Below are positions 35,491-64,000 of a stretch of 64,000 bases of DNA, piece after piece. Each line of letters begins with the position of its first letter. Within the stretch, counting starts at the first letter, position 1. The position numbers were made by a program, and so were the translations under genes. This DNA comes from Lepidodermella squamata. Lineage: Eukaryota > Animalia > Gastrotricha. The stretch covers positions 1,612,001 to 1,676,000 of the forward strand of contig JBLDXI010000011.1 of NCBI GenBank assembly GCA_047495785.1, given 5' to 3'. Below the pieces are notes generated by a model that saw only the letters and a program-made list of their open reading frames with translations, was not told where the DNA came from and did no database searches.

Positions 35491-35506
35491 TATTTACCGA
35501 ACGAAC

Positions 35507-42359: not shown

Positions 42360-43305
42360 ATGATTCTACGAAACTTGCGCCTGCTGACGCGATAACTGGC
42401 GACCAAAGGATTTCGTGTCGACCGTCGTCATGCTCTTCTAACGCCAAAGCTTAATACGAGTCACAACTCATTCGTCATTTTCCGGCGTTCCTTCTCAGCC
42501 GTGCCATCCAATAATGCCTGGCTTGACTTTGTTAAACGAATCACACTGGGCGAAATTGCCGGTACTGCTGTCGTGCTTGTTATTGGTAGTATCCCAATTA
42601 ACTACGCCTATGTTGGATATAAGAATGCGGAAGCGTTGAAACATCGTTTAGAACAAGGCTGTGGCGCATAGTTAGACACGGACAACCGAGTTTTCATTGA
42701 TCGTCCAGAGTTGGAGAAGGATTTACAACACTTGATAACGCCATGTACACCGGACTTATTTCCTCATTACTGGAGAGTATGGCACAGGCAAGACGACTGC
42801 GGTTATGAAAGCGTGTCAATCTGTTGGGAGTGGTGTGATTTACGTGACTGTCCCTGAGCATGTCTCCAAATTTGCCTCAGCTTTCGCCAAGGCTACAGCA
42901 TACAAAACTCGTGCTAGCGGATTGCTTCCATTCTTAAACCAACATTTTATTGGACATGAGCCGAAAACTACTGGTAAGCCTTGTAAGGTGAAAGTAGAGT
43001 TTCCCGCGCTCATTTATATGTGCTATATTTGTTCTTCTATAGGGAATGAAGGAAACTTGGACGCTATTTACCGTGCGTTCGAAGAAACGGCGAAGTGGTA
43101 CAAGGCGAAATATCATAAAGTACCTGTTCTTGTCATCGACAACGTGAATAGGCTGGCAAAAGGGAATCCAAAAATGTTAGAAGTGCTTCAAGAAGGCGCA
43201 AAAGACGCTATTGACCATCGCCAATTCGTTACTGTATTTGTATCACCCGATAGTGTGACGCCTCAGCAAATTACGAGTTCGTTTATTTCCTGTCAATTCA
43301 TTTAA
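42360..43305 (+). pseudogene. P-loop ATPase pseudogene (copy 2): predicted mitochondrial presequence, TM anchor, Walker A/B
   Basis: MILRNLRLL...FRRSFS presequence; TM EIAGTAVVLVIGSIPINYAYV; FIDRPELE; Walker A ITGEYGTGKT; Walker B VLVIDN; 69-nt intron at 42974-43042. It has in-frame stops at ~42393 and ~42669, a frameshift at ~42750, and is truncated in intron 2. Confidence 0.82.
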
Positions 43306-44091
43306 TAGTTGCTAATAATAATAATTGTTAGTAATTGCTAACACGGTACCCGCGTGACGTTAGCGGACCACTTTTGCGCGGAAAATCAGGTAAGTTTTTC
43401 AACATTGCTCATTTTTAGGTTGATATTTTTTTTTTTTTTATTTAAGAAAGTTTTCGGGTGCGCACTGTTGGTTATAGCACAAGCCCTAGGACATGTATCG
43501 AAGATTTAAAAAAATTGATGTCAATGACAGCAGGGAAGCATTCTTTCGGAATTGTATTCCATTTTCTGATGATACCAAGCATTCTTTCAAATGGCTCGAT
43601 ATTCTTCCTGATGATACCAGGATATCATCATAATTTAAATTATTATTGTCTCATCTTGGCAAATTTGGGAAACTTTTCCAAGTTTAAATTTCTAAATCAA
43701 AATTCTATAAAAATTTAATTAAGCGCAAATTTGTGAATGATTTTTTTTCAAATTTTAATGCATAGCTCTATAATTTGAAATATTTTTTCAGTTCCTTTGA
43801 GTGAAAACTTCCTCAATTGCACCCCAACATTTTGCTCGACCCCATTTGATATGACGCCATTGCCGACGTCGTCCTTCGAAACCTTGGCCGTTGTTGCTGA
43901 TTTCGTATCGCACATGATATTACGCATCCTTAACGCCTTAACGCCTTAACTGCCTTAACGCAACCAGGTTGGTTTTTCTTATATACTATTATTATATACC
44001 ATCAAATTAAAATAATAATAAAATATTTTGCCATGAAATTTGGAGGCTAGGAAAAATGCACAAAAATTGAAATAATTTTCATTTATTTGCT

Positions 44092-44705
44092 TTGGTTTTT
44101 TTAGAATATCGCGTTTTGCAAATTGAACTTCAAAATTCGAAATCGGTCATTCAAGATCTCGAATCTAGGCTGACGTCATCTTTCGCTGAAATCGGAGGCT
44201 TGAAGGAAAAAGTCTCATTTCTCGAGAAAGAAAATTCAGATTTTCGCAAAAAAGTCGACGCCCTTGAGAAAAATTTCTCTGTTATCTCTGTCCTACATGG
44301 CTGGTTTTATCACTCGCCGCCTCGGTCTAAGCAGCGACTCAAGCAGCATATATCGAGTGGAACGAGCGGGTCGCGCAGTGTAGCCGCGGCGGTCTTGTTC
44401 ACCCTTACTACCACGTCAAGACTATTTTGACGGCGATTTGCCATCCCGACAATGCGGGTTATCTACTCGACGACGATTTTCACGAACGACTCGTAGCGTG
44501 TTTGCCGCACTTTGACGACTCGCGCGTTCGAGGCGTATCGCAATACGCCCGCATGTTGTCTCAAGAGGGGAATGACGGCAGGCAAACTCGGTTCTGGTGT
44601 TGCCGAACCCATTCTCGATTCTACGCGGTTTTCTCTTTGAGGCTTCGGCTTAGATTTCCGGCGCTTCTTCTTGCTCTTTTTGGACGATTGAAAGGAAACA
44701 GATGA
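44092..44705 (+). pseudogene. Frameshifted coiled-coil ORF convergent with the NOF-like transposase; possible accessory gene of the element
   Basis: Heptad pattern LQIELQNSKSVIQDLESRL...LEKENSDFRKKVDALEK; AG acceptor at ~44104; the reading frame continues in the overlapping ORF 44427-44705. Confidence 0.4.
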
Positions 44706-47058
44706 GTCGGTGGTTGGCGTTGCCGATGAAGAACTTTGCACCACTACATTTGAAAAGGAAACCTTCATCAGAGCGAAAACATATTGCCACAGAAATGTCT
44801 TTATCTCGTTTTGACTGCTGCCTTCTGCGTGGCTTATTGATAAGGTCAGATAACGGAAGTTCATCATCAGGCGATTGATTTCTCAGCTGAGCGGAGGGGG
44901 AAATGTCATCAATACTAGCCAAATCGGACTCGACAGGTGTTGCAGTTTTGCGTTTCACACTTCGCCTCTGAAGTGGTATTTCAACATTAACAAGGGGAAA
45001 AATTAACGAAGATGAATTCTCACCGTCAAGTCGAGATTTGGTCCGAGGGGATAGCCTTGGACAGTATTTCGGAGGCTTGGGCTTCCATTCCTTCCATCGG
45101 GATCTTGCCAGCTCCGGAAGTTTGCAGTACGTGTTTTTACCGCGAGTCCATTGCAATTTGGATACGAATCTGGGCATCGAAGCTTTACGAATGCGGCCGA
45201 ACGGCAGGTGGTGTGCTGAAAGTTTTCTTCACGTTGAGGTCTGATTTGTACACTCGCGTCCAACTTTCGACCGGCGCATTGGAAACATGACCCGTCGCGT
45301 TCTCAGGCAGTGTAGCGAGAATGTAGCTTGCTCCCCAACAACAGTACATTGACATGAAGATAGGGTTGTCGTTGAGAACGTTGACAACAGCTGGGTTGTA
45401 ATCAGGGTTATCAGCTCTTTGTCGTCTTTTTTCTTGCCATGGATTGCTTTCTTCAACGCGATGCCGTAATCCTTCATCAAGTGTGAAAAACATATAAACA
45501 GCATCGTGTAGCCTGGCGGTATGAAGATCTTGTCATTGACAATGAATTTGTAAACGGCGCAGAGGTAGCGATGCAAATCAAGGCGGTTGAAAGCCATCGA
45601 ACCGGCCTGTAACTGCAAAACAAGCGTCGGTAACTTGAGCTCGAGGCAATCTGGCTGTCTGGGAGCGATTCATCAGCGCCGTTTTCCACAACAACAGACA
45701 ACAGCCATGATGTAATGGAAGAGGTGTGTTGATCAGCGGAGACCAGCTCGAGGACTGGAACACCAATACTGGTTCCGTCACTGCGACATAGGATAGCCGC
45801 GTAGTAGTAAAGCGGCTTCCCAGTTATTGGATCGTGGCGGAAAACCCTTCCAGTGGCATCAACGTGAAGCACGGTGAATTCTAAGTCAAAAAGGGCGACG
45901 GTAAGTTTAGGTTAAGCACTAGTTTAGCTTAGAGAACGACCGTAGGTATTATTATTCTGCGATTTCTATTGCAAATTTGCCGACTCAATGAAATAGGTAT
46001 ATAGATTTTTCAATTTTAAAATAGGCAGCCTTTTTTCGGATGATCGCTGCTAACTCTAGGCATTACACAGTATAGTAGACTAATGAATCATGAGTAAATA
46101 ATTATATTACTTTGCATCAAATTTTTCGCGTGTTATTTTAAACCCTTACTTTAGTTAAACTCACTTTGCTTTATAGCCGAAAGATAAAGTTCGATATGAA
46201 GTGGCGACCAAAGGCAGGTCACGAAGGGATAAGCTGCGTAAAACTGCACATACTGCTCGTCGCCCAACTGACTTTCTTCGGCTACCAGTAACAGCATGTC
46301 AACGAAGGGATCGACATGCTGGCGGTCACGAAGGCTGTCTTCGCTCTTGATTTTGCGTAGAACTTCGACAGAAGGCAAGGAATTATGGTTTCCTACCAGT
46401 TACCTTTCGTCATCGATTTCCCGAGCAGCGGCATCGTGAAAGGCAACAGCAGAGACGCTTCTCAGTCGACTCGCCATTTCTTCGCGCTCTTGACCGCGAA
46501 TTTGACTGCATGTTGAAACTCCTTCAAGGTGATTAACCTCCCCAGTCCAATTGACGCCGAATTGTAGTCGACCTTGGTTGTCAACCTTGTTCATCTCGCA
46601 CCTATGGTAAACAAGTTTTACTAGACAATTAGTAGCTTGAAAGGTCGAATTACTCACGTCAGTGATAACTTGCGACAGTTGTCGAATGGACAGTTCGTGG
46701 TGATGGACAAGGTTCCTGCTGTGTTGATTTGATGTGAGACTTTCGCCCAATTGCATCTGTGATCCACCGTGTGGAAAGCATCACGTACCACCTTACCCCA
46801 ACCAGGGTCAAGCTTCAGGCGTTTCCTAGCTTGCCCCTAGCGATTTCGTTTTAAATATTCACAATAATTCTTACGTTAAATATGCTTACCCGCATGCGTG
46901 GTCCGAAGCGATCCAATTCTGTCATCAACAAGAAGAAACAAGGCTGCTCTGGGCCTTCTTGCTCTCATGGGGTCTTTACCCTGCCGTTTCGATATTTGAG
47001 TGGCTAAAGTCACCCCTTTCAGACATGTTAAAGTCACCCCACTGTGCAAAGTCACCCC
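44463..47058 (-). mobile_element. Degenerate MULE-superfamily (NOF/FB-like) transposase relic with one putative terminus
   Basis: Ordered motifs across frameshifted ORFs: LHVDATG..LYYY, P..QVTDACFA, ICFSHLMK (CxxH), SNAPVESW. Three AAAGTCACCCC repeats at 47006-47058 resemble a TIR; the partner end was not found. Confidence 0.72.
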
Positions 47059-47174
47059 AAATTACGGTATATGCGAAAATCATCAACAAGTGTCTGCGAA
47101 AGTGGTTGAGTGTATTTTCACCATCGAAACAGTGTCAGTTCGGTTTTTAGGAAGGTGTCTCTACCACTGATAGA

Positions 47175-47988
47175 CCGCGGGTAGACCGCGAACTGTTGTT
47201 CAGGAAGCTGGTAAGGAGAGGTCGTTAGCGTTTCGGTATAACTCTCCATTTGACGGTAACTCCATCTCGCCATTGTTCTCTACTTGCGGTAAATAATTTA
47301 CCGTAAACGGCACTACCTCGACTCTGAAGCATACAAATACTCGCGCGCGGTAAAATAAATGTTTCTGCGGTAAATTTAGCTCATATTTTGGAGGAATAGA
47401 AATAATGGAGTCGGAACTGCGCGCGAGTCTTGGCTCGCGTTCTTACAATAGAGCGTGTTACGCAACCCTGAGCATGAGGATGACAGAAAAATTGCCTGGT
47501 GGTTTAGGGTGTTATAAAATGACGCGTTACCATGGTGATGCGCGCGGGATTCCTCCATGGCTCATATGTAGCCTGCTTCTTCACTAGCTGTATAAAAGCC
47601 TCACGGTAAGTGGAAAGCATGCTTCTTCACTAGCTGTATAAAAGCCTTACGGTAAGTGGAAAGACAAAAGCTTACGTTAAATAGTAACTGCCGCAAGTGC
47701 TTCTGCGGTAAAACTGACGCCGCGTGCGGTAAAAATTTACAAACGCGGCGGCGTTCGTTATACCGCACGGGCATTGATGTGACGTTGTTTGCGTGCTGCG
47801 GTAAAATATTTACCGTCGAATGGAGAGTTATACCGAAACGCTAGCGAGGTGTCCCGCTGCTGTTTGTGGCAATGCTGAGGGACATGTACACCGGAACGGA
47901 GGCAGCGGTCGCAGTTGGTGGCGAAGTCTCGGACCCATTTGAGACCAGGACCGGCGTGAAGCAGAGCGATCCTTCTGTTTTGCGTGTA
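47175..47988 (+). mobile_element. LINE reverse-transcriptase fragment, split by a MITE and cut by the Tc1-like terminus
   Basis: RVDRELLFRKLVRRG [insert] GVPLLFVAMLRDMYTGTEAAV...TRTGVKQ...LLFCVY; homologous to the LINE at ~61430-61600. Confidence 0.75.
47226..47843. mobile_element. Non-autonomous TIR element (hAT-like TAG...CTA termini), 618 bp
   Basis: TAGCGTTTCGGTATAACTCTCCATT.GACGGTAA is inverted at ~47810-47843. Many internal GCGGTAAA motifs; degenerate flanking duplication GAGAGGTCGT / GCGAGGTGT. Confidence 0.7.
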
Positions 47989-48899
47989 CAGGGTGTTCTT
48001 TTTAAAACCGAACATCCTGCCGTAGTCGCGAAAAATAAATCTGCCGGCTATTTTACGAAAATAAGTTACGAAAATAAATACTAAAATAATTTTTTATCAC
48101 TTTTAATAATAATTTTTAATTTTATTTTCAATTGCACGATGCCCTTGAATTTTAGCGCGCGTTGCCACGTCGACGCGTTGGTTTTTAAATTTTAGCCGTT
48201 AAAACGCCGGAAATCAGGGTATTCGCGCCTGGTTCCTAAGGTAACCGGCAAGCGTGTGGCTCCTTGCCGCGCATCATTCAAGTCAGTTAAGCGAGCTAAA
48301 TGTTTTAGACGCGCCGTTTTTCCTTATTCCGTCTCAGTTTTCACTGTGTACTATACCCAAAAACGGTAAAAAGGGCCATTAATCCCTCTTCCTCGCTGGT
48401 GAAATCCACCGCTAGGATCAATTAAACATCGGTGCAATGGGGTTTTCTGTTATCAGTAATAATGTTTAAGGTATATCAAATGATCCTGAATAATTTTTGA
48501 GCAATTCGAAGTCCGCGGATGAGAGATATACACCTTTATTCGGCCGAAATGCACTGCATGAGGCCGTTTCACGTTGAAAATGACAGTGATATCATGTAAA
48601 TGGACGGAGTAGCGGGCGAAAGCATGTCGAATTTATTGGCATAGATGTTGCTGATGCGGAAGACACTTTCCTTACTTCAGTTCTTTGATATTCTCTCAAC
48701 CTGATGTGATACTACGTCCCCAGTGATGTCTCCAGTGATGTCCCCAGTGATATCGTAGTTAACTTCTCTCGACTAATCAAAGCTGATCTCAAAGGCGTTA
48801 ACAGCCTCATCATCAAAATGGTCTCTCAGGACTATTATTATTACACATGTTCATAACATCAAAAAGAAAGAATTCAAGGTATTTTAGATATAATGATGT

Positions 48900-49240
48900 A
48901 GCCGCTCAATTTATTTCATTTCATAAATTCCGAACCCATGTTCAAGCCGAAATGCGACTCAAAACGAGAAATGCTTAGTCTGAGTTACAGAGGTCCCGAA
49001 CTGTGGAATCAACTGCCTATTGAGGCACGGCAGGCCGAGTCAGCTGACATATGCCGTTCAATTGCTCACGCTTTTTTCTACAACAAAAATGCCTCAACAG
49101 CACTTTAATAAATTGATTGCACTCTATTTTTTTACTGTTGTGCAGCTATTATGAGCTGAGCCGTAGCGACGCAAGTCGGGAGGCTGACTCATATTTTTTA
49201 TTGTAATTTGTAATTAGCGATAGAAATAAGAATAAAACCT
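48900..49240 (+). mobile_element. Short LINE (CR1/L2-type) 3' remnant
   Basis: Translates as FKPKCDSKREMLSLSYRGPELWNQLPIEAR; downstream AATAAA. Confidence 0.55.
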
Positions 49241-49537
49241 ACATTTACCAGCTATTATGAGCTGCTACTGCCTTTTATGAAGTTGTTGAGATTTTGTTTT
49301 AATATTATCTTTATTATTTTTACACACTATGTACTACTGATCAAAATTGTTGACTGATCACTGCTACATATTAAAACGATGAATTGTCCAAACCTTTGTT
49401 TCCACTTACTGTGTTCACTTTTCCTGTCCTAAATCTGAACCTGTCCTGAAATTATCTGTTGCTTTTTCCTTCAAACATTGTCAAGCTGCCCTCTCTTGGG
49501 TGTCATAGCTTCTAAATAAATGAATAAATAAATAAAT

Positions 49538-52500
49538 TTAACCGCCAAATCTAACACCAGCAATGCTCCGAAAAACCCGAAAAAACCTGAAAAATGGATG
49601 CCAAGCCACTTAAAGCTGAAAACCACGTTGACCAACCTAAAAGTAATGGTAACTAAGAAATATACAGTTTGGTCTACAAGAAAACCATGAGAAAGATTGT
49701 TCTCACCAGATTATTTCATGAAATTGGCTATCCTTAAGGTTGCTGATCTGACTCAATGATGATGTCTAACCAGAGTGTGTAGGGCAGACGAAAGTCGATC
49801 CTGCGCTCGAATTACGGCGGCAACACTAGCTTTTTCCTGCTTTGTCGTCATATTGATATAGCCTCCAAGCAAAATCACCCAATTTTACCCATATCTGACC
49901 GTTGATTATTTCCCATCATCAATAAATGTTCCGATAAACCCGAAAAACTCCATTTTAACGTCTAAATGCATCCTAAGACATAAAACGTGAAATACATTGT
50001 GGAACCACTGGTAAGTTGAACCTTGGCGCGCACGCTGATTGGTCAATTTATCGTTGCTAATGACGAATTTCCGTCGTGCAATAAATTATTTTATATTTAT
50101 GAAAAAAATGACCTTGCCACACCCTCTGCCCGGTTTCCATTGACCACGAGCGTAAACTCCATATTAATTGTGGTAAATTGCTGCGGCAAAAAACACTTGT
50201 TGCAAAAAATCTTATGGATCGCACGACAGAACGTTTCATCCGGGAGTCATAGCAACGATCGATTGACCAAACCGCGTGCGCATTGGATTTGACTTTTAAG
50301 TGGTCACACAATGTACCGCGGTGACCCCCCAAAAAGACTTGGTAACTAAGAAATGGATGTGGCTATTCGGACACAAAATTGTGTGTCACGCAATGGCTAT
50401 TCGAACACAGTGTGTGTGCGTGACTGGCTACTCGAACACAAGTGGGCGTGAAGTGGTGTGTGCGCGCATTCGGCTATTTGAACACAGCATCTCAAGTCAC
50501 CTGCTAATCACCGAAATCCGGATTTTAACAACTTTTTGTTAGTCCGGAAAATGCTAAAACTGCGAAAATTCGAAATACCAGCATAACGGGAAAATACCCG
50601 GTCCAAAATTCGAGCGCACATTAGAATCAGCAATAAAGGCGATAAAGCAGTAAAGCAATAAAGCAATAAAGGCCGCTCTCTTTGACTTTGGGTCGCGGCC
50701 ATCGAGTCTGGCAGAAATTCCGATATAAGGCTGCTGCGCGGCGTGATTGCAACTGATAATTAGCGATTTGATAGCTCGAATTTGACTCCGCCGGACGTCA
50801 TCTTTCGGTTTGATTTCAATATGGCTTGCCGGCGGTCTTAAAAGCGCGCGGCGAGGTGAGACCCCTTGATACCATTGGAGGCGCGGGCAGTGAGGATAGG
50901 TTTAAAATCAAGAATACATGACACTAGCAGGGATAGTCTTTGAAATTAAGCTAAAAACGCTAAATCCGTCTTAAATCCGGTCAATTACCGTCTTTTCGCT
51001 AGCCTATTACCGTTATTCCTCGACTTCGAGGGGTGTGTTCGAATAGCCACTTTCGCGCACACCCCGCTGTGTTCAAGTACCCAATCACGCATACACAGTG
51101 TGTTCAAATAGCGAAAAGCGCGCACACAATGTGTTCGAATAGCCATTGCGTGACACACATTTCGCTGTGTCCGAATAGCCTCGTCCCTAAGAAATGTACA
51201 CTCTATTCTACAAGAAAACAATGAGTAACAATGCTAATTAAGCAGATTTTATGACGTGGACCATGTTGAAGGGTGTTCATCTGACCAGAAGATGAGATCA
51301 AACAGCAGATATGGCAGAAGGAAGTCAAGCCTGCTCACGATAAAGTATGGCAACACCGACTTTTTCTTGTTTCATTGTCAAAGTATTTCTGTCTCCTAGT
51401 GAATTCACTCATTTGAGCCCCCATTTGACCGCTGAATTGTTTGCTAACATTGTAAATGTTCCGAATATCCCGAAAAACTCCAAGTATCGACAGAATGCAT
51501 CCAGATTAAGGCGGTGAAAACAATTTAACCGCTTTTATTTTATAATCAAGTTCAGCTTAATTTTGGGTCCAGTTTTTCTGCGCTTTCAATTGCTTTTCGT
51601 TGAATTATTCGGCTATCGATTTGGGTGATTTTTGCTTATTACCTAAAACTAATTTTTAGCTAGGAGTTGAAGGCGAAATGTTTACATTCGGGTGAACAAA
51701 TCACAGCCTTTGCTCATTTTTTCAATTAGTGGTTTCACAGGATTTTGGATTTTTTTAGAAATTCCTATTTCAACTGAATTTGCAAATTAGGCTCTTTTAT
51801 TTGCGCCGTTCTGCATTATTATTATTAACCATGAATCCGTGAAGTCGACGGTTATTTTGTTTTGCACCGGCATTAATGCGACTCCCGCGCTTATTTTTGA
51901 ATCGACCAATAGCGTGCGAGCAAATCATTGTTAAAGAAAACTAGCATTTCACGGCTTTTTAGTGACCGGAGGAAACCACCGCGGATCCGTAAATGTGCAT
52001 CCATAGCAGCAGCAAGTGAAAAACCGCGGTGACCCTCCGAAAAGTAACGGTAAATAAGTAGTATTTACTCTGTTTTACAAGAAAATAATGAGAGACAGTG
52101 TTTTTGACGGGTGATTTGAAGGCATGGACCTCGTTGAAGATGGTGATAATGAGATTTATGCTCTGAAAGACCGACTGGCTGTTAGGGCAGACGTGCTAAA
52201 AATAACCATCATCCTACAAAAAAAGCTGTGGTAATCTTGTAGAGAATACATTACTGTACTTAGAAACACTGTTTCCGCAAGGTATAACCGCACTTAAGTG
52301 AAAGTTTCCTGGGTTAAACGCTTAAGATCTGCGAAAAACGGCATAAAAAGGGCTTGTTTAGGCTTAGCGCATATGTATAATTGAGCCATATTTAGAAAAA
52401 ATGACGCCGGCTGCCTTATTAAATGCTTGAAATGCTATCAGACAAACACTAACAAAGGTGTCGTCACCGGTGATAAAATGCGGAATTACGGGGATGAAGT

Positions 52501-53495
52501 TTCATTGAAGTTTAGCCAGTCGGTGTTTCAGAGCATAAATCTCATTATCACCATCTTCAACGAGGTCCATGCCTTCAAATCACCCGTCAAAAACACTGTC
52601 TCTCATTATTTTCTTGTAAAACAGAGTAAATACTACTTAGTTACCGTGACTTTTTGGGGGGTCACCGCGGTTTTTCACTTGCTGCTGCTATGGATGCATG
52701 CTGTCGATAAAATGGGGTTTTTCGGGATATTCGGAACATTTACAATGTTAGCAAACAATTCAGCGGTCAAATGGGGGCTCAAATGAGTGAATTCACTAGG
52801 AGACATAAATACTTTGACAATGAAACAAGAAAAAGTCGGTGTTGCCATACTTTATCGTGAGCAGGCTTGACTTCCTTCTGCCATGCCTGTTGTGTTAGAT
52901 CTCATCTTCTGGTCAGATAAACAATCTTCAAGATGGTCCACTTCATGAAATCTGCTTAATTAGCATTGTTACTCATTGTTTTCTTGTAGAATAGAGTGTA
53001 CATTTCTTAGTTACCATGTCTTTTTGGGGGGGTTACCGCGGTATTTCACGTTTTATGTCTTAAGATGCATTTAGACGTTAAAATGGAGTTTTTCGGGTTT
53101 ATCGGAACATTTATTGATGATGGGAAATAATCAACGGTCAGATATGGGTAAAATTGGGTGATTTTGCTTGGAGGCTATATCAATATGACGACAAAGCAGG
53201 AAAAAGCTAGTGTTGCCGCCGTAATTCGAGCGCAGGATCGACTTTCGTCTGCCCTACACACTCTGGTTAGACATCATCATTGAGTCAGATCAGCAACCTT
53301 AAGGATAGCCAATTTCATGAAATAATCTGGTGAGAACAATCTTTCTCATGGTTTTCTTGTAGACCAAACTGTATATTTCTTAGTTACCATTACTTTTAGG
53401 TTGGTCAACGTGGTTTTCAGCTTTAAGTGGCTTGACATGCATTTTTCGGGTTTTTCGGAACATTGTTGGTGTTAGCAAATAATTTAGCGGTTAAA
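49538..53495. repeat. Large interrupted palindrome built from a diverged ~340-bp monomer
   Basis: Near-identical inverted pairs in nested order: ~49540-49995/53040-53495, ~51187-51480/52710-53010, ~51995-52170/52535-52700. Confidence 0.85.
50355..51186. mobile_element. MULE-type MITE (832 bp) with a 9-bp TSD
   Basis: CTAAGAAAT at 50346-50354 and 51187-51195; TIR GGA.G.GGCTATTCGGACAC with GCTATTCGAACAC sub-repeats. The empty site is present in the mirror arm at ~53000-53015. Confidence 0.88.
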
Positions 53496-56129
53496 TTTTG
53501 GCCAACATAAGTGAATTTGCTAAGAGAAGATGTCAGTTTGACAATAAAGCAGAAAAATGCTGGTGCTGCCGCCCTAACTCGAGCGCTGGGTCGGCTTTCT
53601 GATACCATACCATCCTTGTTAGAGGACGTTTCAACGCGTTGTAGCCGCATTTCTTCGTCATTTGTGCGGTCATAAGAGGTCCATGCATGAATTTTACACA
53701 TTATTTGAATACATAGCTATAGTCGGGCTAAAATTCTGCAAGTGACGTACTGTTGACGCTTTACAGTCACTGCTATTTGTTTCAAGCGGCCGCATTAGGT
53801 CTGGAATCGTTTTTTTCGCTATGGATACTTACTCTTCTGATTCTCCGGGAAATTCAGCGGACCGGACGCGTTATATTATTGCTATTTATTGCGTCGTAAA
53901 GTTACATCAATCAAATATCAAATAATTTTACCAGTAGAAATATTTACAAGAAAGTATCTATGCGAGCATGCCGGACTGGTAGGACATTTAGGACGTGTTG
54001 AAACCGATATCACAAGGATGCATATCAAAAGACAAAGACCGGCGCGGTGCTGAACTTGTTTTTTAACCGCAGTCACACAAACAGTTACACCCGCCCGCAA
54101 CTGCGGTTACCGCAGGGAAATGGATGACAGGACACAGGCATCCTCAGGGAATATTCTGGCCGCCGCCCCGCGCCGCTGCAAACGAGTGAACAATATCTAA
54201 ATTAGATCTCGGTTATCAGTGTCTAAGCGTTGTCTCAGTCATCGGCTGTCCTCAAATCTTCGGCGGATCCAGTGATATCAATGAATTTTTCGCCGAAAAT
54301 GATGCTAAATTCTCACTCTTAACGACTCACGCCGCGCGCCGGATGCTGCCAATTATGTTAAAGTTTAGATGACATTTTGTTAAACACTCAACTTGATCTG
54401 AATGGTGGTGCAAATAAACGGCTGTTCCTAGCCAAGCGATGTTGATTTTCCATGCTATGGATACTAAAGATGCATTATGAGTAAAGGAAATGCTAAGCGC
54501 TCTCTTTACTTAAAAGCCATCTTGCTAAGGAATTAGCAAGACATTCTTAGCATGATGACTTCCACGTAAGGACGCGGTGTCACTGGTATGCTTGGTATGA
54601 ATGGCTTACTCAACAATCCTTACTGAGACTTCGCCGCTTCAGACTGAGCCATCTAAGGATCTGATCTCAGACCTGTGCACCTTAAATGACGCGGCGTAGA
54701 GTGGGTGTCCATAGTTATGATGATTAGGACGGCAGTCCTTACTTAGACCAAGCTATGCTCATTGGTGAACCCCTATCCTTAGTAAGGAACATGACAACGT
54801 CACGAACAGAGTAAACGAAATAAATTTAGCTGCTAAATCATTATAATCGAAAATACCTAGCATTTTCTTTTTGATATTACCATGTTCTGCGAGACAGTTT
54901 CGATGATAACGGTGGTAAGTCATTTGAGATCAGCTTTGACTAGTCGGGAGGAGTTAACTACGGCATCACTGCGGACGACGTATCACAACATCAGAATGAG
55001 AGGTTATCAAATGTAAAGAAGGAAGGAAAAGTGTCTTCCGCATCAGCAACATCCATGCAATTAAATTAGACATGTTTTCGCCCGGCTTTCCGTCTATTTA
55101 CATGATACCAATGCCCTTTTCATCGTGAAACAGCTGGTTGCATTGCATTTCGTCCATAAAAGGGTGCGTTTCTCTGATCCGCAGACTCAAACTTGAGCAA
55201 CAATTTATCAAGGCCGCTTGATATATCGTGAACATTCTCAATGACAGCAGAAAACCACGTTGCACCGCCGTTATTTTGATCCCAGCGGTGAATTTCAACG
55301 GCAAGGAAGCGCAATTTAAGGCTCATTTTACCGATTTTGGGTATAGCACATCGCGATAACTGAGATAGAATAAGAAAAAAGGACGCGGCAGTTGCATTCA
55401 GCTCGCTTTACTTACTAGAAATTTGTCAGGCATGGAGCTTCGCGCTTGCAGACTATCTTTAGAACTGGATTAGAAAACCCGGATTTCAGGCGTTTTAACG
55501 GATAACATTTGAAAACCGACGCGTCGACGTGGTTACGCGCGCTAAAATTCAAGGGCATTTTGCAATTGGAAATAAAATTTAAAAATAAAATTAATATTGT
55601 TTAAAAATTATTTTAGTAAAATTATTTTCGTAAATTAGCCGGCAGATTTATTTTTCGCGACTACGGCAGGATGTTCGGTTTTAAAAAGAACACCCTGTAG
55701 AAGAATCTATTAGAACAGAGTTATATCAAACCAGTAGTTTGATCAACTCGAATAACATATAGAGAATTAATTCTGGTATTTTGATACTTTATTGTGACCT
55801 ACGTCGATTGTGACGTATCGATTGCGCCATGGAAATGAGCCATCATTTCTATTGCGTATTGATTGCGCATTATCTTTGAATCGATCGGTGGATGAATTCC
55901 TATTGCGTATTTCGGGATTCTAATTTGTAGTAGCGCATTGCTGTTGCGCACGGAGGTTCCTTGTAACTAATTTCTGGTGTTCGAGCGTTGGTGGCTTGAA
56001 ACTGGTAACTGATATTTAAAATATGAATAAACCATCTGAAACATATTGGTGTTGAGTGTTTAATCCGATGACACCTTCCGCGTAACTTTACGTTTCGTCC
56101 CGAAATGATGGCGATTTTCAATAACGCGT

Positions 56130-58076: not shown

Positions 58077-58739
58077 GAAGTTGTAATGGGTACGTTATTT
58101 AAAGTTTGTAACCTGTAGCGCTAGGGCTAGCTTGTTGCTCTTGTCACGCGCTTAGATTACTGCGCGTTTCTGCAAATGCAAGCAAGTTCACCGATGAGGC
58201 GATAGTAAATGCACTGGTCTATTTCCAAGTCGATTTCGTATATGTCTGAGCATTGAACTACTAGCTCTTTATATAGTGCCACTCCGCATTTTTCAAACGT
58301 TTCGCAGCGAAGTTCTAGAACAGTGGTTTCGCAGCGACTCGTTACTGTTTTCATTGGCTGATGCCCTGGAATACCGTTGGTGTTTTTGTCGGTTAACACC
58401 TCGGCACAGGGCGCGGTTGCGCTCGTTACGTTGCGCGCCTCAGTATTATTGCCCGCGTGTTCATTAGCGACTGCGCACGGCGCCTATTGCGTTTCATTTA
58501 TTGATGTGCGCGCGGGCTCGGCGGCGATCGGTATTTCCTGTTTTAGCGCTTCCAAACCGCTTACAGTTTTATAAATCAGAAATGCGGTCGTCGTGACCAT
58601 TGCGCTGACCAACGCTTGCAGCACGTTCTTTCCGAAAGCGATGTAGTTACACAGAGTCGCGTTGGTGAATACGGTTTCTGTAATTTCATCCTTACGTAGT
58701 TTATGCGCTCCGGCTTTTGAGCTGTCGATTCCTTATTCA

Positions 58740-60400
58740 ATCAAAAAGAAAAGGTTGCTCGTAAACGCTCTCCCCGGGAAATTTCAAGACGTCTTGCTAG
58801 CGAGTTTTCTTTTTTTGTTTGAATATCTCTCCCTCCTTTTCTGGCTACTTGTCCGATTTCTGGTACATGGATTTGTTTATGCGCGGTTCCTTGTAACAGT
58901 TTCCCAGTTTGGCTGCTCTTGCCGGTAACTCTCTGTGTGTGATGCTGCTTCCGCTCATTTTCCACGTGATCCCTGTTTCTGCAGAGCTTGGTTCTGAGGC
59001 CTTTATGGTGTTTGGTGGCGTGATGTTGGGCAGGATCCTGCTTGCTGCCTCACTGTATGTCATGTATTGCGTATTCTGTATCGGTGTTATGGTTTGGCAG
59101 ACTAGGCGCTGGCGCCTCATTGTTCCATTGTTCTGTTTCGTACTCGTCTGCGGGTAAAAATTGCAATGTGCGGCTTTTGTTTTGTAACGTGGTTTGCGTT
59201 GTGCTGCGCGTGTTGCGCTGTTGCTGCTGCGCTATCTCGAATTCCGTCATTTTGTCTAGTTGAGTAGGCACATCGCCATAGTATTCTTTTAAGCGATTGC
59301 GATGTACTACTTTTTCCTTGCCGCTACCGTTAAATAGTCGTATCACGTAGTTGAGCGCTCCGTAGCGCGCTACAACCGTGTGAGGACCGCGCAGACATGG
59401 AATTTCGGAGACTGCCCTCTTTTTACCACAGGGTTATGTAGCCACACCAGCTCGCCTTCTTGAAAAGGCTCGCAGTTATTGCTGCCTTGATCGCATTTGC
59501 GCTTTTGGCGTGCGCGCGCTTGCGCTAGTTTTTGCCGTGTTTCCTTGAATGCGGTGCGTAACCGCGTGTAGACTTTTTGCGCGTACTCACTACGGTTTCG
59601 GATTTCATGACTGAATGCTGGCTCTTGAATGGCTACGACTATTGGGAGCTTTGCATGCCGGCCAGTCATCAGATAGAATGAAGCGTAAGATGTAGAGTCA
59701 TGCGTGCTGGTGTTATAAGCGAACAGCGCTGATTTAAGGTATACTTAGACATCCCAATCGAACTGAGTAGCAGGAGTGAGGTATTTGGCTATGATATCCT
59801 GCACAGTTTTGTTCATGCGCTCGCAAAACCCATTACTCATGGCATGGTATGGTGTGGTGTGTACATGTTTAGTACCCAGGATTGTGCAGATATCGTTTAT
59901 TAGCTTGGCTTCGAAATTTCGACCATTGTCATTTAACAAAATTTGACTGCGTCCACACTTAAAAACGAAGTCGAGCAAAAAATCGGCCACTGATTCGGCT
60001 GTAATATTTTTAAGCGGATATCCCTCAATATATTTTGTGAAGTGGTCGCCTAGTAGCTGAATATAATTGTTGCCTTTCTTTGTTGTAGGTTGAATTGGAC
60101 CCGTTACGTCCCATGCGACGAGTGCCATGGGCTCCGTCGTATCAATTGGTTGCAGGGGAGCGACTGGGTGCGCATTTGGCGCTTTTCGTTGTTGGCAGTC
60201 GTGACACTTCCGGACGTAATCAGCAATTGTTTCTTCCATCTTTGGCCAGTAGAATCGTTGTCCTGCGTTCACATCGTTGTGCAAACTCTTCAAATCTCGA
60301 GCCTGTAGTGCTGGTGGTATACAAGGGCGGTTATCGTTGCCGAGTGTTACTATTACATAATCTTCCCGCATGTGGTGCGTGACAGGGCGGTTGAATGAGT
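58740..60400 (-). mobile_element. Ty3/Gypsy pol remnant (integrase zinc-binding, core and C-terminal domains), 5'-truncated
   Basis: LH...RFYWPKM..YVRKCHDCQ; WDVTGP, DHFTKY, NDNGRNF, PYHAMSNGFCERMNKTV; FQEGELVWL, VVHRNRLKEY; stops and frameshifts present. Confidence 0.9.
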
Positions 60401-60502
60401 GCGGGATAATCTCCCGCACAATCCCGCAGCTAATCCTGCACCATCCCGCTGTAATGCGGGATCGATGCGTGATACAGTGTGTTATCGTCGCGCACTTATC
60501 CC

Positions 60503-60695
60503 GCACCACGTCGGCACGTTGGTTTTCAAATTTTAGCCGTTAAAACGCCTGAAATCAGGGTTTTCTAACCAATTTCTTAAGATAGTCAGCAAGCGCGCAG
60601 CTCCATGCCTGACAAATTTCAAGTCAGTAAAGCGAACTGAATGCAATAGCCGCGCCCTTTTTTCTTAATCTATCTCAGTTTTCGCATTGTGATAT
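60503..60695. mobile_element. Further fragment of the CAGGGTG-family arm
   Basis: Co-linear with ~48165-48360 (CGTTGGTTTT.AAATTTTAGCCGTTAAAACGCC.GAAATCAGGGT). Confidence 0.7.
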
Positions 60696-60989
60696 AACTC
60701 ACAGAAGATTAATTGGAACTGGAGATGGCGAAAACCGAAAGCTACGGCTGCACCTCGCTCGAGCAAATTGGCGCTTTTGTCTGATGAAGGATAGGTTGAA
60801 ATGCTTAGTCAAAAGGCCAACAATGTCTGGGAGCTGAAGCGTAAGGAAGACAACAAATGCCACCGGTAGAAGTTTGAAGTTTTTCGCTGTCACCTGATGA
60901 AGGCACTAGGCGGTGGAAATTCATCTATTCTGGGGGAAAAGAAACCGACTGCTACTCGTGAGAAAATGGCTGTCACTGCAGTGAAGCGA

Positions 60990-62122
60990 ATCGCTATCGA
61001 CGACGGTGTTCCCACCAAATTGATCAAACTGGATGCTCTAAGTGCTTGGTCCAACCCGTTCACGAATGCGATGAAGCCCAGCGAGAGTTTTTTGACGCGG
61101 GTATTTTGAACGGGCAACCGTACCCGAAACAGTGGAAAACCGCCTTCCGGTTCTTCAAACCGGTCTTCAAGCAGGGAGACTCGAATGACCCGAACAACTA
61201 CCGACCGATATCATTGCAACCTTGCAACGTTGCAGAAGTTTTCTCGAAGATTCTGGATGTTCGGTTGAGAGAATGGCTCAGTCTGTTTTCGAAATTGCAA
61301 AAATGCCAATTCGGATTCCAGGAGGGCTGCTCAACATTAAGCGCGGTAATGGTCCTGAACGCTGTTATGGCCTATTGGCACGAGCGTCACCCACGTGTAT
61401 ATGCAACTTTTGTCGACTTTACCTCGGCGTTCGATAAGATCAACCGCAACCCTTTGTCCAAGAAGCTCGATCGACGCGGCGTGCCGCTTCAATTCGTTGC
61501 TTCAATGTATGATGACACAAAAGCGGCTGTATCAGTGGGCGATCTCGGCTACCTTCGATTTTGTTTTGCTGTTGTTTTGCGTCTACATTGACGACATATA
61601 GGAAGCGCTGTGACATATAGTGCATATAGGCAGGCGTAGCTGGTTTGCCTCTCGGCATCGAGAGCGTGAGGTATTCTGTTCGCAGACGATGTGGCCATAC
61701 TGTCGGCCCATGGACACAAAATGGAGGGCTATTTGTATCGACTGCTAAATTACGAAACGGACAACAGACGGAAAACAAAGCACGTCATTTTCGGCGAACA
61801 AGAAGCTGAACCGAAACCGCCTTGGCGACGTCGAGCTGGAAAAGGTCAGTATTTTTAAATTCTCCGAAGATCTTTCCTTCAACGAGGCTATTGCCAAAGT
61901 AGACTGAAACTGCTGAGGCTTACCGGGCTCTTGCCAAGCTTATTTGGAAAATTTACGAGTTGCTGATTGCAAGTCTCAGACTACTGTATAATGGGGTCGT
62001 ACTGGCGGCTGGTCTTTACGCGCGGAGTTATGGGGCCTTGAGGCAATCAGCTATTCCGCCTATGCATTGCAGGGTGATCAAGAGAGCTCACCGACTGCCT
62101 ACATCTACCTGCCAAAGGTTGC

Positions 62123-62157
<35 letters not shown>

Positions 62158-62975
62158 ATGGTTGCCTGGCACGAATACGGAGAGAAAAAACTACGCGATT
62201 AGATTCTAGATTTCTATTTTCGAATGAGAGACGAATGGGAGAGACGATAGTCTGTTGCGAACAGCATACCTGACACAGCTGATGTCAATGTCACGAAGAA
62301 TGTACAACAAGGTACTTCGAGCGGAGTTGAAGTTAGGAAACATCGGACCAACCGGCCTGACGAAACCTGGTATTAACGCGGCCGCCGCGAAGGCTGTTTT
62401 CAGAAACATGTACACGGCAATCGCAAGAAAGGAGAACGAAGAGAACAAAGGCTCACAGTTGTGGCCGATTATCGCGCGAGGCTTCTCACGCCGAACGGTA
62501 TCTGTACGATTTGGGCCCGAAATTAGGCAGAATACTGTTACGTATAAGAACTGACTCGACTTTTGGTGTAAGTGTTTATGTGAACTAGCGGAGGGAAGAG
62601 AGGGTCATCTGCAAATGGTGCGGTGCTCCAGGCATCGAGCCTACGAATTGGCTGCTGCTTCAACATGCGATGTGCGAGTGCCCGAGAAACGAGGCAAAAT
62701 GGACGAAAGCCGATAGGGACCGGCTACTGTTCGGGCGTCCAATTCTGTACACAGGGCCAGCTACCTTGGAGAAAATCAATATTGCCTAGATATTATTTTA
62801 TTAGATCCGTCGTGTATTTTTCTAATTAATTTATTTATATTTCTAATTCTACTCCTTTGTGCCTTTTGGCCCGTGTAAAACATCGCTACAGCGGTGACTC
62901 AGGTGCTGAACTCTCAACTGATGCCCAAGCATATCGCCGGGCAACTGGCGACTGGGCTCATAAATCCATCCATCC
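60990..62975 (+). mobile_element. Degenerate LINE (non-LTR retrotransposon) RT and 3' region
   Basis: PKQWK..PVFKQGD..DPNNYRPISL, QFGF, FVDFTSAFDKINR, LLFCVYIDD, LFADD (~61675); frameshifted; (CATC)n tail at ~62965. Confidence 0.85.
62125..62155. repeat. (GA)n microsatellite
   Basis: About 15 GA units are visible directly. Confidence 0.9.
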
Positions 62976-63621
62976 ATTTCTTTCCTCTTTCGTGCGCTTG
63001 ATTGATGTTTTTGTGTCAGGCAAGTTCTTACGTAGCACTTGGAAAACGCAAGCATGTGGAATGTAGAACTGAATAGTTAAGTTCAGTTCTGTTCCTAATC
63101 CATCGTTTTCAGTTTTCAGTTTTATTCCGTTTTTCTAACTTTGCTGATTCAAGTTGTTTGGTTGCTTCAGGTGTTTACGACATTTTGTGGCTGTGATTTC
63201 ATTCTCGGACATTTTAATATTAAAGCACCTGCCACAATAGTAATTTGAAACATCTTCAATCGTAGATTCGTGCTGTGCCTGCGCCTTTTTCTTACCTTCA
63301 AAATTGTACATTTTCGTTCGTTTCATCTGGAAAAAAGGACAAAATAAAAAGCTTTTCGTTTTCGTTTTCGTAGATAGCAATTCTGCCAAAGCAATTCTGC
63401 CAATGCAATTCTGCCTGTTTCATTCTTGGACATCATCATAATATTGAAGCACCAGCCACTGTAGTCATTTCAAACATCTTCAATCGTAGCTAGCGATTCT
63501 GTCGAAAGAAGGAGCTCGCATCCGTGAAAACATTAAAAATTACGCTGGATGCTGTGGGTATTGAGTATCTTTTGTTGGTTAATAAGTTCCGATATATTCA
63601 TAGATATACAGTTAATTAAAA

Positions 63622-64000
63622 ATGATTCTAGGAAACTTGCGCCTACTATCACTGGCGACCAAACGATTTCGTGTCGACCGTCGTCATGCTCTTCTAACGC
63701 CAAAGCTTAATACGACTCACAACTCATTCGTCATTTTCCGACGTTCCTTGTCAGCCGCGCCATCCAATAATGCCTGGCTTGACTTTGTTAAACGTATCAC
63801 AATCGGCCAACTTGCCGGTACTGCTGTCGTGCTTGTTATTGGTAGTATCCCACTTAACTACGCCTATGTTGGATATAAGAATGCGGAAGCGATGAAACGT
63901 CGTTTAGAACAAGGCTGTGGCGCATATTTAGACACGGACAACCGAGTTTTCATTGATCGTCCAGAGTTGGAGAAGGATTTACAACACTTGATAACGCCAT
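63622..64000 (+). CDS. 5' end of an apparently intact P-loop ATPase gene (copy 3), running off the window
   Basis: 126 stop-free codons, MILGNLRLLSLATKRFRVDRRHALL...FRRSLSAAP..GQLAGTAVVLVIGSIPLNYAYV..FIDRPELEKDLQHLITP. Both stops of copy 2 are absent (TAT in place of TAG; the TAA codon is deleted). It is missing from the ORF track because no stop lies in the window. Confidence 0.75.
   Translation, partial: MILGNLRLLSLATKRFRVDRRHALLTPKLNTTHNSFVIFRRSLSAAPSNNAWLDFVKRITIGQLAGTAVVLVIGSIPLNYAYVGYKNAEAMKRRLEQGCGAYLDTDNRVFIDRPELEKDLQHLITP

What the first reader, a model, noticed from the sequence alone, without database searches (positions are those of the whole stretch)
42360..64000. Multi-copy, predicted mitochondrion-targeted, membrane-anchored P-loop ATPase family of non-animal appearance, turning over inside a transposon field
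Seen: three related copies (fragment 35507-35980, pseudogene 42360-43305, open 63622->end). Together they give an Arg/Leu/Ser-rich presequence, one TM helix, FIDRPELE, Walker A GEYGTGKT, Walker B VLVIDN, VFVSSD, and a late LVGGR motif, with short spliceosomal introns. Knowledge: this layout resembles archaeal-ATPase/AAA_16 (STAND-related) NTPases; from memory, similar proteins are expanded in fungi and protists rather than animals. Inference: this may be a horizontally acquired, intronised gene undergoing birth-and-death evolution in repeat-rich chromatin. That pattern is typical of immunity, cell-death or genetic-conflict genes, here possibly acting at mitochondria.
Basis: partly seen in the sequence, partly recalled or inferred. 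Interest (0 to 1): 0.78.

Follow-up and report, generated by a model that had tools for sequence, protein, structure and literature searches.

The report
Membrane-anchored Yme2-like ATPase gene copies
The window holds two dead copies and one still-open start of a multi-copy, expressed gene family for a single-pass membrane-anchored ATP-binding switch protein that distantly resembles the yeast mitochondrial protein Yme2; it is unstudied and rare in animals, but there is no good evidence that it was recently acquired from another organism.

Summary
Self-BLAST finds three related copies on the + strand. Copy 1 (35505-35978) is a fragment with two stops. Copy 2 (42360-43302) has two stops and a frameshift and is cut off in an intron. 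Copy 3 (63622-64000) is open for 126 codons to the window's end. Reads show many near-identical paralogues and spliced transcripts, so the family is alive.

The protein has a basic, acid-poor N-terminus, one membrane helix, and an ORC/STAND-like AAA+ domain of Pfam type ATPase_2/AAA_16, followed by a lid and a winged helix. The fold of the closest full-length relative best matches archaeal ATPase_2 proteins. In the ESM Atlas it matches yeast Yme2 from the membrane helix onward (TM 0.72). A mitochondrial inner-membrane location is therefore plausible but untested.

All relatives whose source organism I could look up are bdelloid rotifers, Glomeromycota and other fungi, and dictyostelids. However:
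- All three introns are shared in position and phase with Adineta vaga, and two with glomeromycete genes.
- The window clade is sister to bdelloids.
- A tree with fungi held apart is not rejected (p-AU 0.52).

"Recently acquired and then intronised" is not supported. An immune or conflict role rests only on copy turnover and replacement-biased variation. The scan noted paralogue variation just beyond this window (s1-394214).

The parts
35505..35978 (+). Copy 1: a 5'- and 3'-truncated pseudogene fragment. It runs from the Walker B exon through the LVGGR exon. Intron at 35721-35780, stops at 35561-35563 (TAA) and 35939-35941 (TGA), next donor GT at 35979.
   Evidence: Its exon end matches the exon end in L001 and the A. 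vaga intron.
42360..43302 (+). Copy 2: pseudogene. Exon 42360-42973, intron 42974-43042, exon 43043-43276, donor at 43277. Homology ends at 43302, inside the intron. Stops at 42393-42395 and 42669-42671. Frame change between about 42744 and 42756.
   Evidence: The intron is confirmed by RNA-like contigs.
42772..42795 (+). Walker A motif (GEYGTGKT) of copy 2.
   Evidence: G-x-x-G-x-G-K is invariant across the family.
43126..43143 (+). Walker B motif (VLVIDN) of copy 2. The aspartate is followed by asparagine, not the catalytic glutamate.
   Evidence: The family consensus is VLVIDN with the aspartate invariant.
63622..64000 (+). Copy 3: an open start of the gene, 126 codons to the window's end. 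Homology to copy 2 begins at 63592.
63622..63753 (+). Presequence-like N-terminus of copy 3 (residues 1-44). It has 7 Arg, 2 Lys, 1 Asp and no Glu. Peak helical hydrophobic moment is 0.67. An Arg-x-Leu|Ser pattern lies at residues 42-45.
   Evidence: Composition only; no targeting predictor was run.
63796..63852 (+). Predicted single membrane helix (residues 59-77, mean Kyte-Doolittle 1.75), 77 residues before Walker A.
   Evidence: The family median distance from helix to Walker A is 76 residues.
63949..63972 (+). FIDRPELE motif, the conserved start of the ATPase_2-type domain.
   Evidence: It aligns with the same motif in P0003, P0027 and dictyostelid and fungal members.
35047..35491 (.). 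Dispersed repeat that abuts and truncates copy 1. Other copies lie at 54926-55361 and 48336-48634.
42244..42327 (.). End of a very high-copy repeat immediately upstream of copy 2. In other genomic copies it continues into different sequence after 42327.
   Evidence: summed depth 9215; loose ends at 42327.
59745..61591 (.). Retroelement remnants between copies 2 and 3: an integrase ORF at 59745-60509 (-) and a reverse-transcriptase ORF at 61046-61591 (+).
   Evidence: rve 9e-10, Integrase_H2C2 2e-10, RVT_1 1.1e-10.

Best explanation
This is a decaying, same-strand cluster of a lineage-expanded gene family, with two pseudogenes and one possibly live copy.

Shown:
- The family encodes a protein of roughly 400 residues (the closest full-length relative has 406): a basic N-terminal extension, one membrane helix, an ORC/Cdc6- and STAND-like AAA+ module of the Pfam ATPase_2/AAA_16 type, a helical lid and a winged-helix domain.
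- The family is transcribed and spliced.
- It is old in eukaryotes. It occurs in bdelloid rotifers, several fungal phyla and dictyostelids, with intron positions shared between animal and fungal genes.

Inferred:
- The N-terminus is a mitochondrial presequence, and the helix is a stop-transfer anchor in the inner membrane. The ATPase module would then face the intermembrane space, as in its distant structural relative Yme2.
- Walker B reads D-N instead of D-E, and Yme2 has D-R. The protein therefore probably acts as a nucleotide-dependent assembly switch that forms oligomers, not as a fast motor.
- In this genome the family has been amplified by local duplication. It is eroded by point mutations and transposon insertions.
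For: - Three copies and their lesions.
- Many paralogues: 170 DNA contigs of run X1 lie on 1.3 kb at 88-100% identity. Summed depth on most of the exons is about 7-30 times that of the one contig identical to copy 2 (depth 42).
- Expression and splicing: X2 contigs cover exons only, join 42972 to 43043, and continue from 43275 into the next exon.
- Family and fold: ATPase_2 is above Pfam's cut-off in P0003, P0005, P0009 and P0033. At E<=0.01, AAA_22 matches 30, AAA_16 29 and ATPase_2 27 of 30 members. The AlphaFold model of P0003 (54% identical to the window protein) has pLDDT 90. Its best PDB matches are 2fna and 2qen, then ORC/Cdc6 and CED-4/NLR.
- Yme2 link: the Pfam RNA12 profile matches 8 of 30 members at E<=0.01, and one of them (P0196) reaches its cut-off with 28.4 bits against 27. 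In the ESM Atlas the model aligns to the 'Mitochondrial escape protein 2' cluster at TM 0.72 over residues 7-406, membrane helix included. Yme2's topology and its D-R Walker B are described in PMC9284673.
- Presequence-like N-termini: 67 of 84 full-length members have 30 or more residues before the helix. In these, Arg is 9.6% against 5.6% and Asp+Glu 4.1% against 13.2% in the ATPase part.
- Age: introns shared with A. vaga, Gigaspora and Paraglomus. The window clade is sister to bdelloids with support 94/91.
Against: - No targeting predictor or experiment was available. 17 of 84 members, including the closest relative P0003, start directly with the membrane helix and could sit in another membrane.
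- The Yme2 link is distant. RNA12 scores are below the cut-off in most members, there is no RRM domain, and no Yme2 sequence was available for a profile comparison.
- The window's own pieces score only sub-threshold generic P-loop hits.
- Copy 3 is seen for 126 codons only.
- The transcripts may come from paralogues outside the window.
- Logan contigs give no true copy number.
- The RNA nature of X2 is inferred from its exon-only coverage, not from its record.
Confidence: 0.6

Rival explanations
1. Origin by horizontal transfer. An ancestor of the rotifer-like lineage took up an intron-containing genomic copy from a fungus, for example a glomeromycete or a relative. The gene then spread within that lineage and was amplified here.
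For: Every relative whose source organism I could look up is a fungus, a dictyostelid or a bdelloid rotifer. No other animal appeared among about 40 such proteins. In the 94-row quick tree a Gigaspora protein is the nearest outside row (support 91). Two introns are shared with glomeromycete genes, which a eukaryote-to-eukaryote DNA transfer would also explain. Other agents' notes report further fungal- or protist-type genes in this genome (not checked by me).
Against: In the careful tree the Gigaspora protein joins the other Glomeromycota, and the animal-containing clade stands apart. Holding all fungi together costs nothing (p-AU 0.52). Identity to fungi, dictyostelids and rotifers is equally low, at 28-34%, so no donor stands out. 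The A. vaga gene sits among ordinary animal genes (SYF1, glutamate dehydrogenase, cyclin). Only 150 of 1054 hit clusters were listed and few were named, so absence from other animals is not shown.
Confidence: 0.3
2. Origin by vertical descent. The family dates from the common ancestor of animals, fungi and amoebozoans, like its relative Yme2. It was lost in most animal lineages and kept in rotifer-like animals.
For: The family occurs in three major groups of Amorphea. Intron positions and phases are shared across animals and fungi. A tree arranged like the species tree is not rejected. The window clade and the bdelloids group together.
Against: It needs many independent losses in animals. Part of the window's clade (P0027/P0196) lies on a compact, intron-poor environmental contig of unknown, possibly non-animal origin. 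The tree is unrooted.
Confidence: 0.45
3. The family is an organelle-based immune, cell-death or genetic-conflict sensor. Paralogues diversify under positive selection, and this drives the birth-and-death pattern.
For: The fold is STAND/ORC-like, the type used by Apaf-1, CED-4 and NLR proteins. There are many paralogues and pseudogenes in repeat-rich DNA. Of 37 listed paralogue differences that fall in codons of copy 2, 32 change the amino acid and 5 do not. An earlier first-reader note describes replacement-biased paralogue differences just beyond the window.
Against: The protein has no sensor repeats and no effector domain. It ends after the winged helix. A count of 32 of 37 is not clearly above the roughly 75% expected without selection. 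The reference is itself a pseudogene, and only the best-supported 40 of 70 differences were listed. Bdelloid species I looked at carry a few paralogues, and the one A. vaga locus examined is in ordinary gene context.
Confidence: 0.15
4. The protein is anchored in a membrane other than the mitochondrial inner membrane, such as the outer membrane or the ER, and the basic N-terminus is not a presequence.
For: 17 of 84 members have the helix at the very N-terminus, like signal-anchored proteins. No predictor was run.
Against: The acid-poor, Arg/Ser/Thr-rich extension is family-wide. The N-terminal hydrophobic stretch of copy 3 is broken by Arg, unlike a signal peptide. The structural match to Yme2 includes the helix.
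Confidence: 0.25

Closest known systems
Yme2 / RNA12 (yeast 'mitochondrial escape protein 2', Pfam PF10443)
   Same: Both have a presequence, a single membrane helix about 60-90 residues before Walker A, and an ORC-like AAA+ module with lid and winged helix. In both, Walker B lacks the catalytic Glu (D-R in Yme2, D-N here). The predicted structures align at TM 0.72 from the helix to the C-terminus. RNA12 profile hits are weak to borderline. Yme2 forms large homo-oligomers that depend on the Walker motifs (PMC9284673).
   Different: There is no RRM domain before the helix. The protein is much shorter (about 400-490 residues against about 850-880). Most members fall below the RNA12 cut-off. The family occurs in an animal and is multi-copy.
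Archaeal ATPase_2 proteins (PF01637), e.g. SSO1545 (2fna) and PAB2304 (2qen)
   Same: They are the best solved-structure matches (Foldseek E 3e-10 and 3e-9) and the second-best PDB sequence hit (2fna, E 1.6e-4). They share the motif order: F-x-x-R-x-x-E-L, Walker A, Walker B, a sensor strand, an Arg-rich loop and a G-G-R/P motif.
   Different: The archaeal proteins are soluble, with no N-terminal extension or membrane helix. Sequence identity is 12-15%.
ORC1/Cdc6 initiators and STAND NTPases (Apaf-1, CED-4, plant NLR)
   Same: The AAA+ base, lid and winged-helix arrangement is the same. N-terminal sequence hits to Apaf-1 are weak.
   Different: There are no DNA-binding partners, no CARD/TIR effector domains and no WD40/LRR/TPR sensor repeats. 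The protein is membrane-anchored.
Uncharacterised 'AAA+ ATPase domain-containing proteins' of bdelloid rotifers (e.g. Adineta vaga I4U23_009371)
   Same: The architecture is the same. They are sister to the window clade in the tree. All three window introns are shared in position and phase.
   Different: Identity is only about 30%. The A. vaga gene has four more introns in the 5' half. It lies in ordinary gene context, not in a repeat-rich cluster of decaying copies.
Fungal 'Orc1-like AAA ATPase' cluster with WHD_AAA_fung (PF24913)
   Same: It is the best predicted-structure match in the ESM Atlas, at TM 0.78 over residues 1-406.
   Different: PF24913 did not appear at E<=0.01 for the nine members scanned singly or among the 25 families listed for alignment A3. 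Its function is also unknown.

Membership tests
Pfam ATPase_2 (PF01637) / AAA_16 (PF13191) P-loop NTPases | Profile score at or above the curated cut-off (33.2 bits for ATPase_2, 32.6 for AAA_16). | tested here: inconclusive
   The window's exon pieces reach only 12-22 bits because they are fragments. The closest full-length relative P0003 (54% identical) scores 34.5 on ATPase_2. P0005, P0009 and P0033 score 36.9-44.1. At E<=0.01, 27 of 30 members match ATPase_2 and 29 of 30 match AAA_16.
Pfam ATPase_2 (PF01637) / AAA_16 (PF13191) P-loop NTPases | AAA+ fold with Walker A, Walker B, a helical lid and a winged helix. | tested here: met
   The model of P0003 has pLDDT 90. The top PDB matches are 2fna and 2qen. 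Walker A and B are present in copy 2.
Yme2 / RNA12 (PF10443) | RNA12 profile score at or above 27 bits. | tested here: not met
   Only P0196 reaches it, with 28.4 bits. P0033, P0048 and P0027 score 19-24 bits, and P0003 and the window pieces show no hit. 8 of 30 members match at E<=0.01.
Yme2 / RNA12 (PF10443) | An RRM domain on the matrix side, before the membrane helix. | tested here: not met
   No RRM hit in any member scanned. The stretch before the helix is 58 residues in copy 3.
Yme2 / RNA12 (PF10443) | A single membrane helix followed by an AAA+ module, located in the mitochondrial inner membrane. | tested here: inconclusive
   The architecture and the structural superposition are met (TM 0.72). 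Localisation cannot be tested with these tools.
STAND NTPases (Apaf-1/NLR type) | An NTPase, helical and winged-helix core, plus C-terminal sensor repeats and usually an N-terminal effector domain. | tested here: not met
   The core fold is shared. The protein ends after the winged helix, and no repeat or effector domains were found.
Classical AAA (PF00004) | A profile match over the whole domain, with the second region of homology. | tested here: not met
   There are only partial, weak matches around Walker A and B.
Horizontally transferred gene in an animal | Robust nesting inside a donor clade, or rejection of the species-tree arrangement. | tested here: not met
   In the careful tree the window clade is sister to bdelloids and apart from fungi. 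The AU test does not reject fungi as one clade (p 0.52).
Horizontally transferred gene in an animal | Absence from other animal lineages. | tested here: inconclusive
   No animal other than bdelloids appears among about 40 proteins with an organism on record. But only 150 of 1054 hit clusters were listed, and most carry no name.

The most novel reading that the evidence does not exclude
An expressed, rapidly diversifying multi-copy family of STAND-like NTPases is anchored in mitochondrial membranes of a rotifer-like animal. It works as an organelle-based surveillance or genetic-conflict system, and Yme2 is its housekeeping cousin.
Probability: 0.12. Interest if true: 0.8.

Novelty: new variant of a known kind. 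Interest (0 to 1): 0.45.

Why it matters
Yme2 is poorly understood, and it is described as an AAA+ protein in a compartment, the mitochondrial intermembrane space, that supposedly lacks DNA or RNA. A widespread family without the RRM domain but with the same anchor-plus-ATPase layout would show that this module is older and more common than the yeast protein suggests. The family is present in fungi, dictyostelids and a few animals, and amplified here. It would also offer simpler proteins for studying the module.

For this genome, the result replaces a 'recent foreign gene' story. The family is old, patchily retained and locally amplified. Its copies turn over fast, which is worth testing for selection once intact copies are in hand.

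Tried and rejected
- Pfam and NCBIfam on the window's own exon pieces gave only sub-threshold generic P-loop hits.
- The ESM Atlas feature search on the copy 2 piece gave only generic bacterial and archaeal AAA clusters at 0.88-0.89.
- The word-based protein search with the window piece found just two environmental proteins. With family alignments it was dominated by bdelloid sequences or returned few hits.
- MAFFT misplaced the short N-terminal pieces (alignment A1), so A1 was not used.
- Pfam on ten further ORFs of the repeat field found nothing convincing. Neighbours of the environmental relatives gave no taxon-specific domain.
- Literature searches for the family (PF01637 with transfer, Arch_ATPase with rotifer or Glomeromycota, CR-ATPase) found no description of it.
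- A Crinkler-type 'CR-ATPase' reading was dropped. No Crinkler header or related Pfam hit was seen.
- The organism could not be identified by me. 'Probably a rotifer' comes from other agents' notes, supported here only by the sister position to bdelloids.
- TargetP, MitoFates and DeepLoc are not available here.


Full report
**1. What is in the sequence**

A self-comparison of the window confirms three related pieces, all on the + strand. Region 42330-42744 matches 63592-64000 at 94.0%, and 43061-43302 matches 35505-35746 at 95.9%. A tblastn search with family proteins finds no further piece in the window.

Copy 3 starts with ATG at 63622, preceded by an in-frame stop two codons upstream. It is open for 126 codons until the window ends.

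Copy 2 has the same start at 42360 and carries several lesions:
- TAA at 42393-42395, next to a 6-nt insertion.
- TAG at 42669-42671, where copy 3 has TAT.
- A +1 frame change between about 42744 and 42756.
- Loss of homology at 43302, inside an intron.

Copy 1 begins at 35505, directly after a dispersed repeat (35047-35491). It has TAA at 35561-35563 and TGA at 35939-35941, and runs to an exon end at 35978.

The introns are 42974-43042 (69 nt) and 35721-35780 (60 nt), with a further donor at 35979. All are GT..AG and phase 1.

The surroundings hold integrase and reverse-transcriptase ORFs, several repeat families within the window, and a very high-copy repeat ending at 42327. Upstream, at 3-26 kb, lie typical animal genes with NIDO, AMOP, TIG, LDL-receptor class A and C2H2 domains. 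The contig is therefore from an animal.

**2. Is the family alive?**

Contigs of four public runs were laid on 42200-43500 at 88% identity or more.

Run X1 behaves as genomic DNA. It gives 170 contigs in four identity classes (34 at 99% or more, 69 at 95-99%, 55 at 90-95%, 12 under 90%). The one contig identical to copy 2 has depth 42. Summed depth on most of the exons is 300-1370, so about ten or more close paralogues are likely. This is a rough figure, because Logan contigs give no true copy number.

Run X2 has no RNA label on record but behaves as RNA:
- It covers 42376-42990 and 43036-43299.
- It has nothing inside 42992-43035, nothing after 43300 and almost nothing upstream of the start codon.
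- One contig joins 42972 to 43043 with ten extra letters. These keep the frame and add three codons, so it comes from a paralogue.
- Contigs ending at 43273-43275 run on into the sequence of the next exon as known from copy 1.

The family is therefore transcribed and spliced at the predicted sites. Fourteen X2 contigs are 99% or more identical to copy 2 segments. That does not show which copy is expressed.

**3. What the protein is**

The window's exon pieces alone give only weak generic P-loop hits. The word-based search found two environmental relatives. An exhaustive profile search found 1054 clusters at E<=0.001 and 453 at E<=1e-10.

The closest is P0003, 54% identical over 283 residues. 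It sits on a 1346-nt intronless environmental contig.

Full-length members pass Pfam ATPase_2 and match AAA_16 and AAA_22.

An AlphaFold model of P0003, built with 60 family sequences, has pLDDT 90.3 and pTM 0.87. It shows a long N-terminal helix (residues 5-42, containing the membrane segment), a five-stranded AAA+ core, a helical lid, and a helical plus winged-helix end.

The best solved-structure matches, in order:
- The archaeal ATPase_2 proteins 2fna and 2qen.
- ORC/Cdc6 initiators.
- CED-4 and plant resistosome NTPases.

In the ESM Atlas the model aligns at TM 0.78 to a fungal 'Orc1-like AAA ATPase' cluster. It aligns at TM 0.72 over residues 7-406 to the cluster 'Mitochondrial escape protein 2', which is Yme2.

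Sequence support for the Yme2 link is weak but present. The Pfam RNA12 profile matches 8 of 30 members at E<=0.01, and one of them (P0196) reaches its cut-off.

Yme2 is an inner-membrane protein with a presequence, a matrix RRM, one membrane helix and an AAA+ domain in the intermembrane space. Its Walker B reads D-R, and it forms large homo-oligomers that depend on the Walker motifs (PMC9284673). Another paper groups RNA12 with DAP3 among STAND-like NTPases (PMC8195603).

The present family has the same layout without the RRM. Its Walker B reads D-N, with the aspartate invariant.

**4. Targeting**

Copy 3's first 44 residues hold 7 Arg, 2 Lys, 1 Asp and no Glu. The peak helical hydrophobic moment is 0.67, and an Arg-x-Leu|Ser pattern lies at residues 42-45. 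The membrane helix is at residues 59-77.

The trait is family-wide:
- 67 of 84 full-length members have 30 or more residues before the helix.
- In their first 40 residues Arg is 9.6%, against 5.6% in the ATPase part.
- Asp+Glu is 4.1%, against 13.2%.
- The remaining 17, P0003 among them, start with the helix itself.

This fits a mitochondrial presequence followed by a stop-transfer anchor. It is composition only. No predictor or experiment was available.

**5. Where it comes from**

The roughly 40 proteins for which the sources give an organism fall into these groups:
- Bdelloid rotifers (Adineta, Rotaria, Didymodactylos).
- Glomeromycota (Rhizophagus, Glomus, Diversispora, Gigaspora, Paraglomus, Entrophospora, Scutellospora, Dentiscutata).
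- Endogone.
- Pezizomycetes (Tuber, Trichophaea).
- Dictyostelids (Tieghemostelium, Cavenderia).

The transfer story is not:
- Identity to rotifer, fungal and dictyostelid members is equally low, at 28-34%.
- In a careful 29-row tree the window groups with four environmental sequences (support 99/97). That group is sister to bdelloids (94/91) and apart from fungi and dictyostelids. The quick 94-row tree agrees on the rotifer link.
- Holding all 15 named fungal rows on one side of a branch fits as well as the free tree (p-AU 0.52).

Gene structure points the same way. The A. vaga gene has seven introns. The last three split the same aligned codons at phase 1 as the three introns seen in the window. 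The Gigaspora gene shares two of these and the Paraglomus gene one, again at phase 1. The environmental relative on L001 shares the two introns that could be checked there.

So the introns were not gained after a recent arrival. Either the gene is ancestral to animals and fungi and was lost in most animals, or an intron-bearing fungal copy entered an ancestor of this lineage and the bdelloids long ago.

I cannot decide between these two. Most hit clusters have no taxon, the tree is unrooted, and part of the window's clade (P0027/P0196) lies on a compact environmental contig of unknown origin.

In A. vaga the gene lies among ordinary genes (SYF1, glutamate dehydrogenase, cyclin), not in a repeat field.

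Other agents' notes call this genome 'probably a rotifer'. My only support for that is the sister position to bdelloids.

**6. Turnover and selection**

Copies 2 and 3 differ at about 20 sites in 378 nt, 13 of them replacements. This is what a dead copy is expected to show.

Of 37 listed paralogue differences from the reads that fall in codons of copy 2, 32 change the amino acid and 5 do not. This agrees in direction with an earlier first-reader note on DNA just beyond the window (s1-394214). It is not clearly above the neutral expectation. The reference is a pseudogene, and only the best-supported 40 of 70 differences were listed.

An immune or conflict role therefore remains a guess. The protein also lacks the sensor repeats and effector domains of classical STAND immune proteins.

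**7. Verdict**

The family assignment, the multi-copy decay and the taxonomic skew are right. 'Recently acquired and intronised' is not supported. Mitochondrial anchoring is plausible and gains a concrete model from the Yme2 resemblance, but it is untested.

The family is unstudied, and I found no paper on it. Its architecture is best described as a Yme2-like anchor plus ATPase without the RNA-binding domain. I rate it as a new variant of a known kind, of moderate interest.

Noticed in passing
window 17205-21871 (+): Large exons of an animal extracellular protein with NIDO, IPT/TIG and AMOP domains (mucin-4/SUSD2-like). This shows the contig is metazoan.
   Followed up: partly
window 3217-3993 (+) and 25621-26253 (-): An ORF with an LDL-receptor class A module, and an ORF with tandem C2H2 zinc fingers.
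   Followed up: no
window 47987-55699: Nested inverted repeats: 53041-53498 against 49995-49534 (95%), 52691-53010 against 51503-51187 (94%), and 54813-55699 against 48921-47987 (75%). This looks like transposon copies in opposite orientation or a large palindromic arrangement.
   Followed up: no
window 40160-40510: A low-complexity tract that reads as Arg-Val or Gly-Leu dipeptide repeats in ORF translations. Probably a microsatellite-like simple repeat.
   Followed up: no
L005 (Adineta vaga CP075495.1, gene at 6001-8201): The bdelloid homologue has seven short introns plus one of 404 nt. It sits between glutamate dehydrogenase, SYF1 and cyclin genes, which is ordinary gene context, unlike the repeat field here.
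   Followed up: partly
family-wide (P0003, P0010, P0013, P0017 against P0005, P0009, P0032 and others): There are two N-terminal types. In one the membrane helix is at residue 1-30. In the other a basic extension of 40-180 residues precedes the helix. This may mean two different target membranes within one family.
   Followed up: partly
window 42744-42756, compared with run X1 and X2 contigs: In other genomic copies and in the transcripts, the letters before 42756 differ from copy 2: they end in GCTGAAA(G/A), reading Ala-Glu-Ser before Tyr-Phe-Leu. So copy 2 carries a small local rearrangement at the frameshift, not a simple one-base slip.
   Followed up: partly
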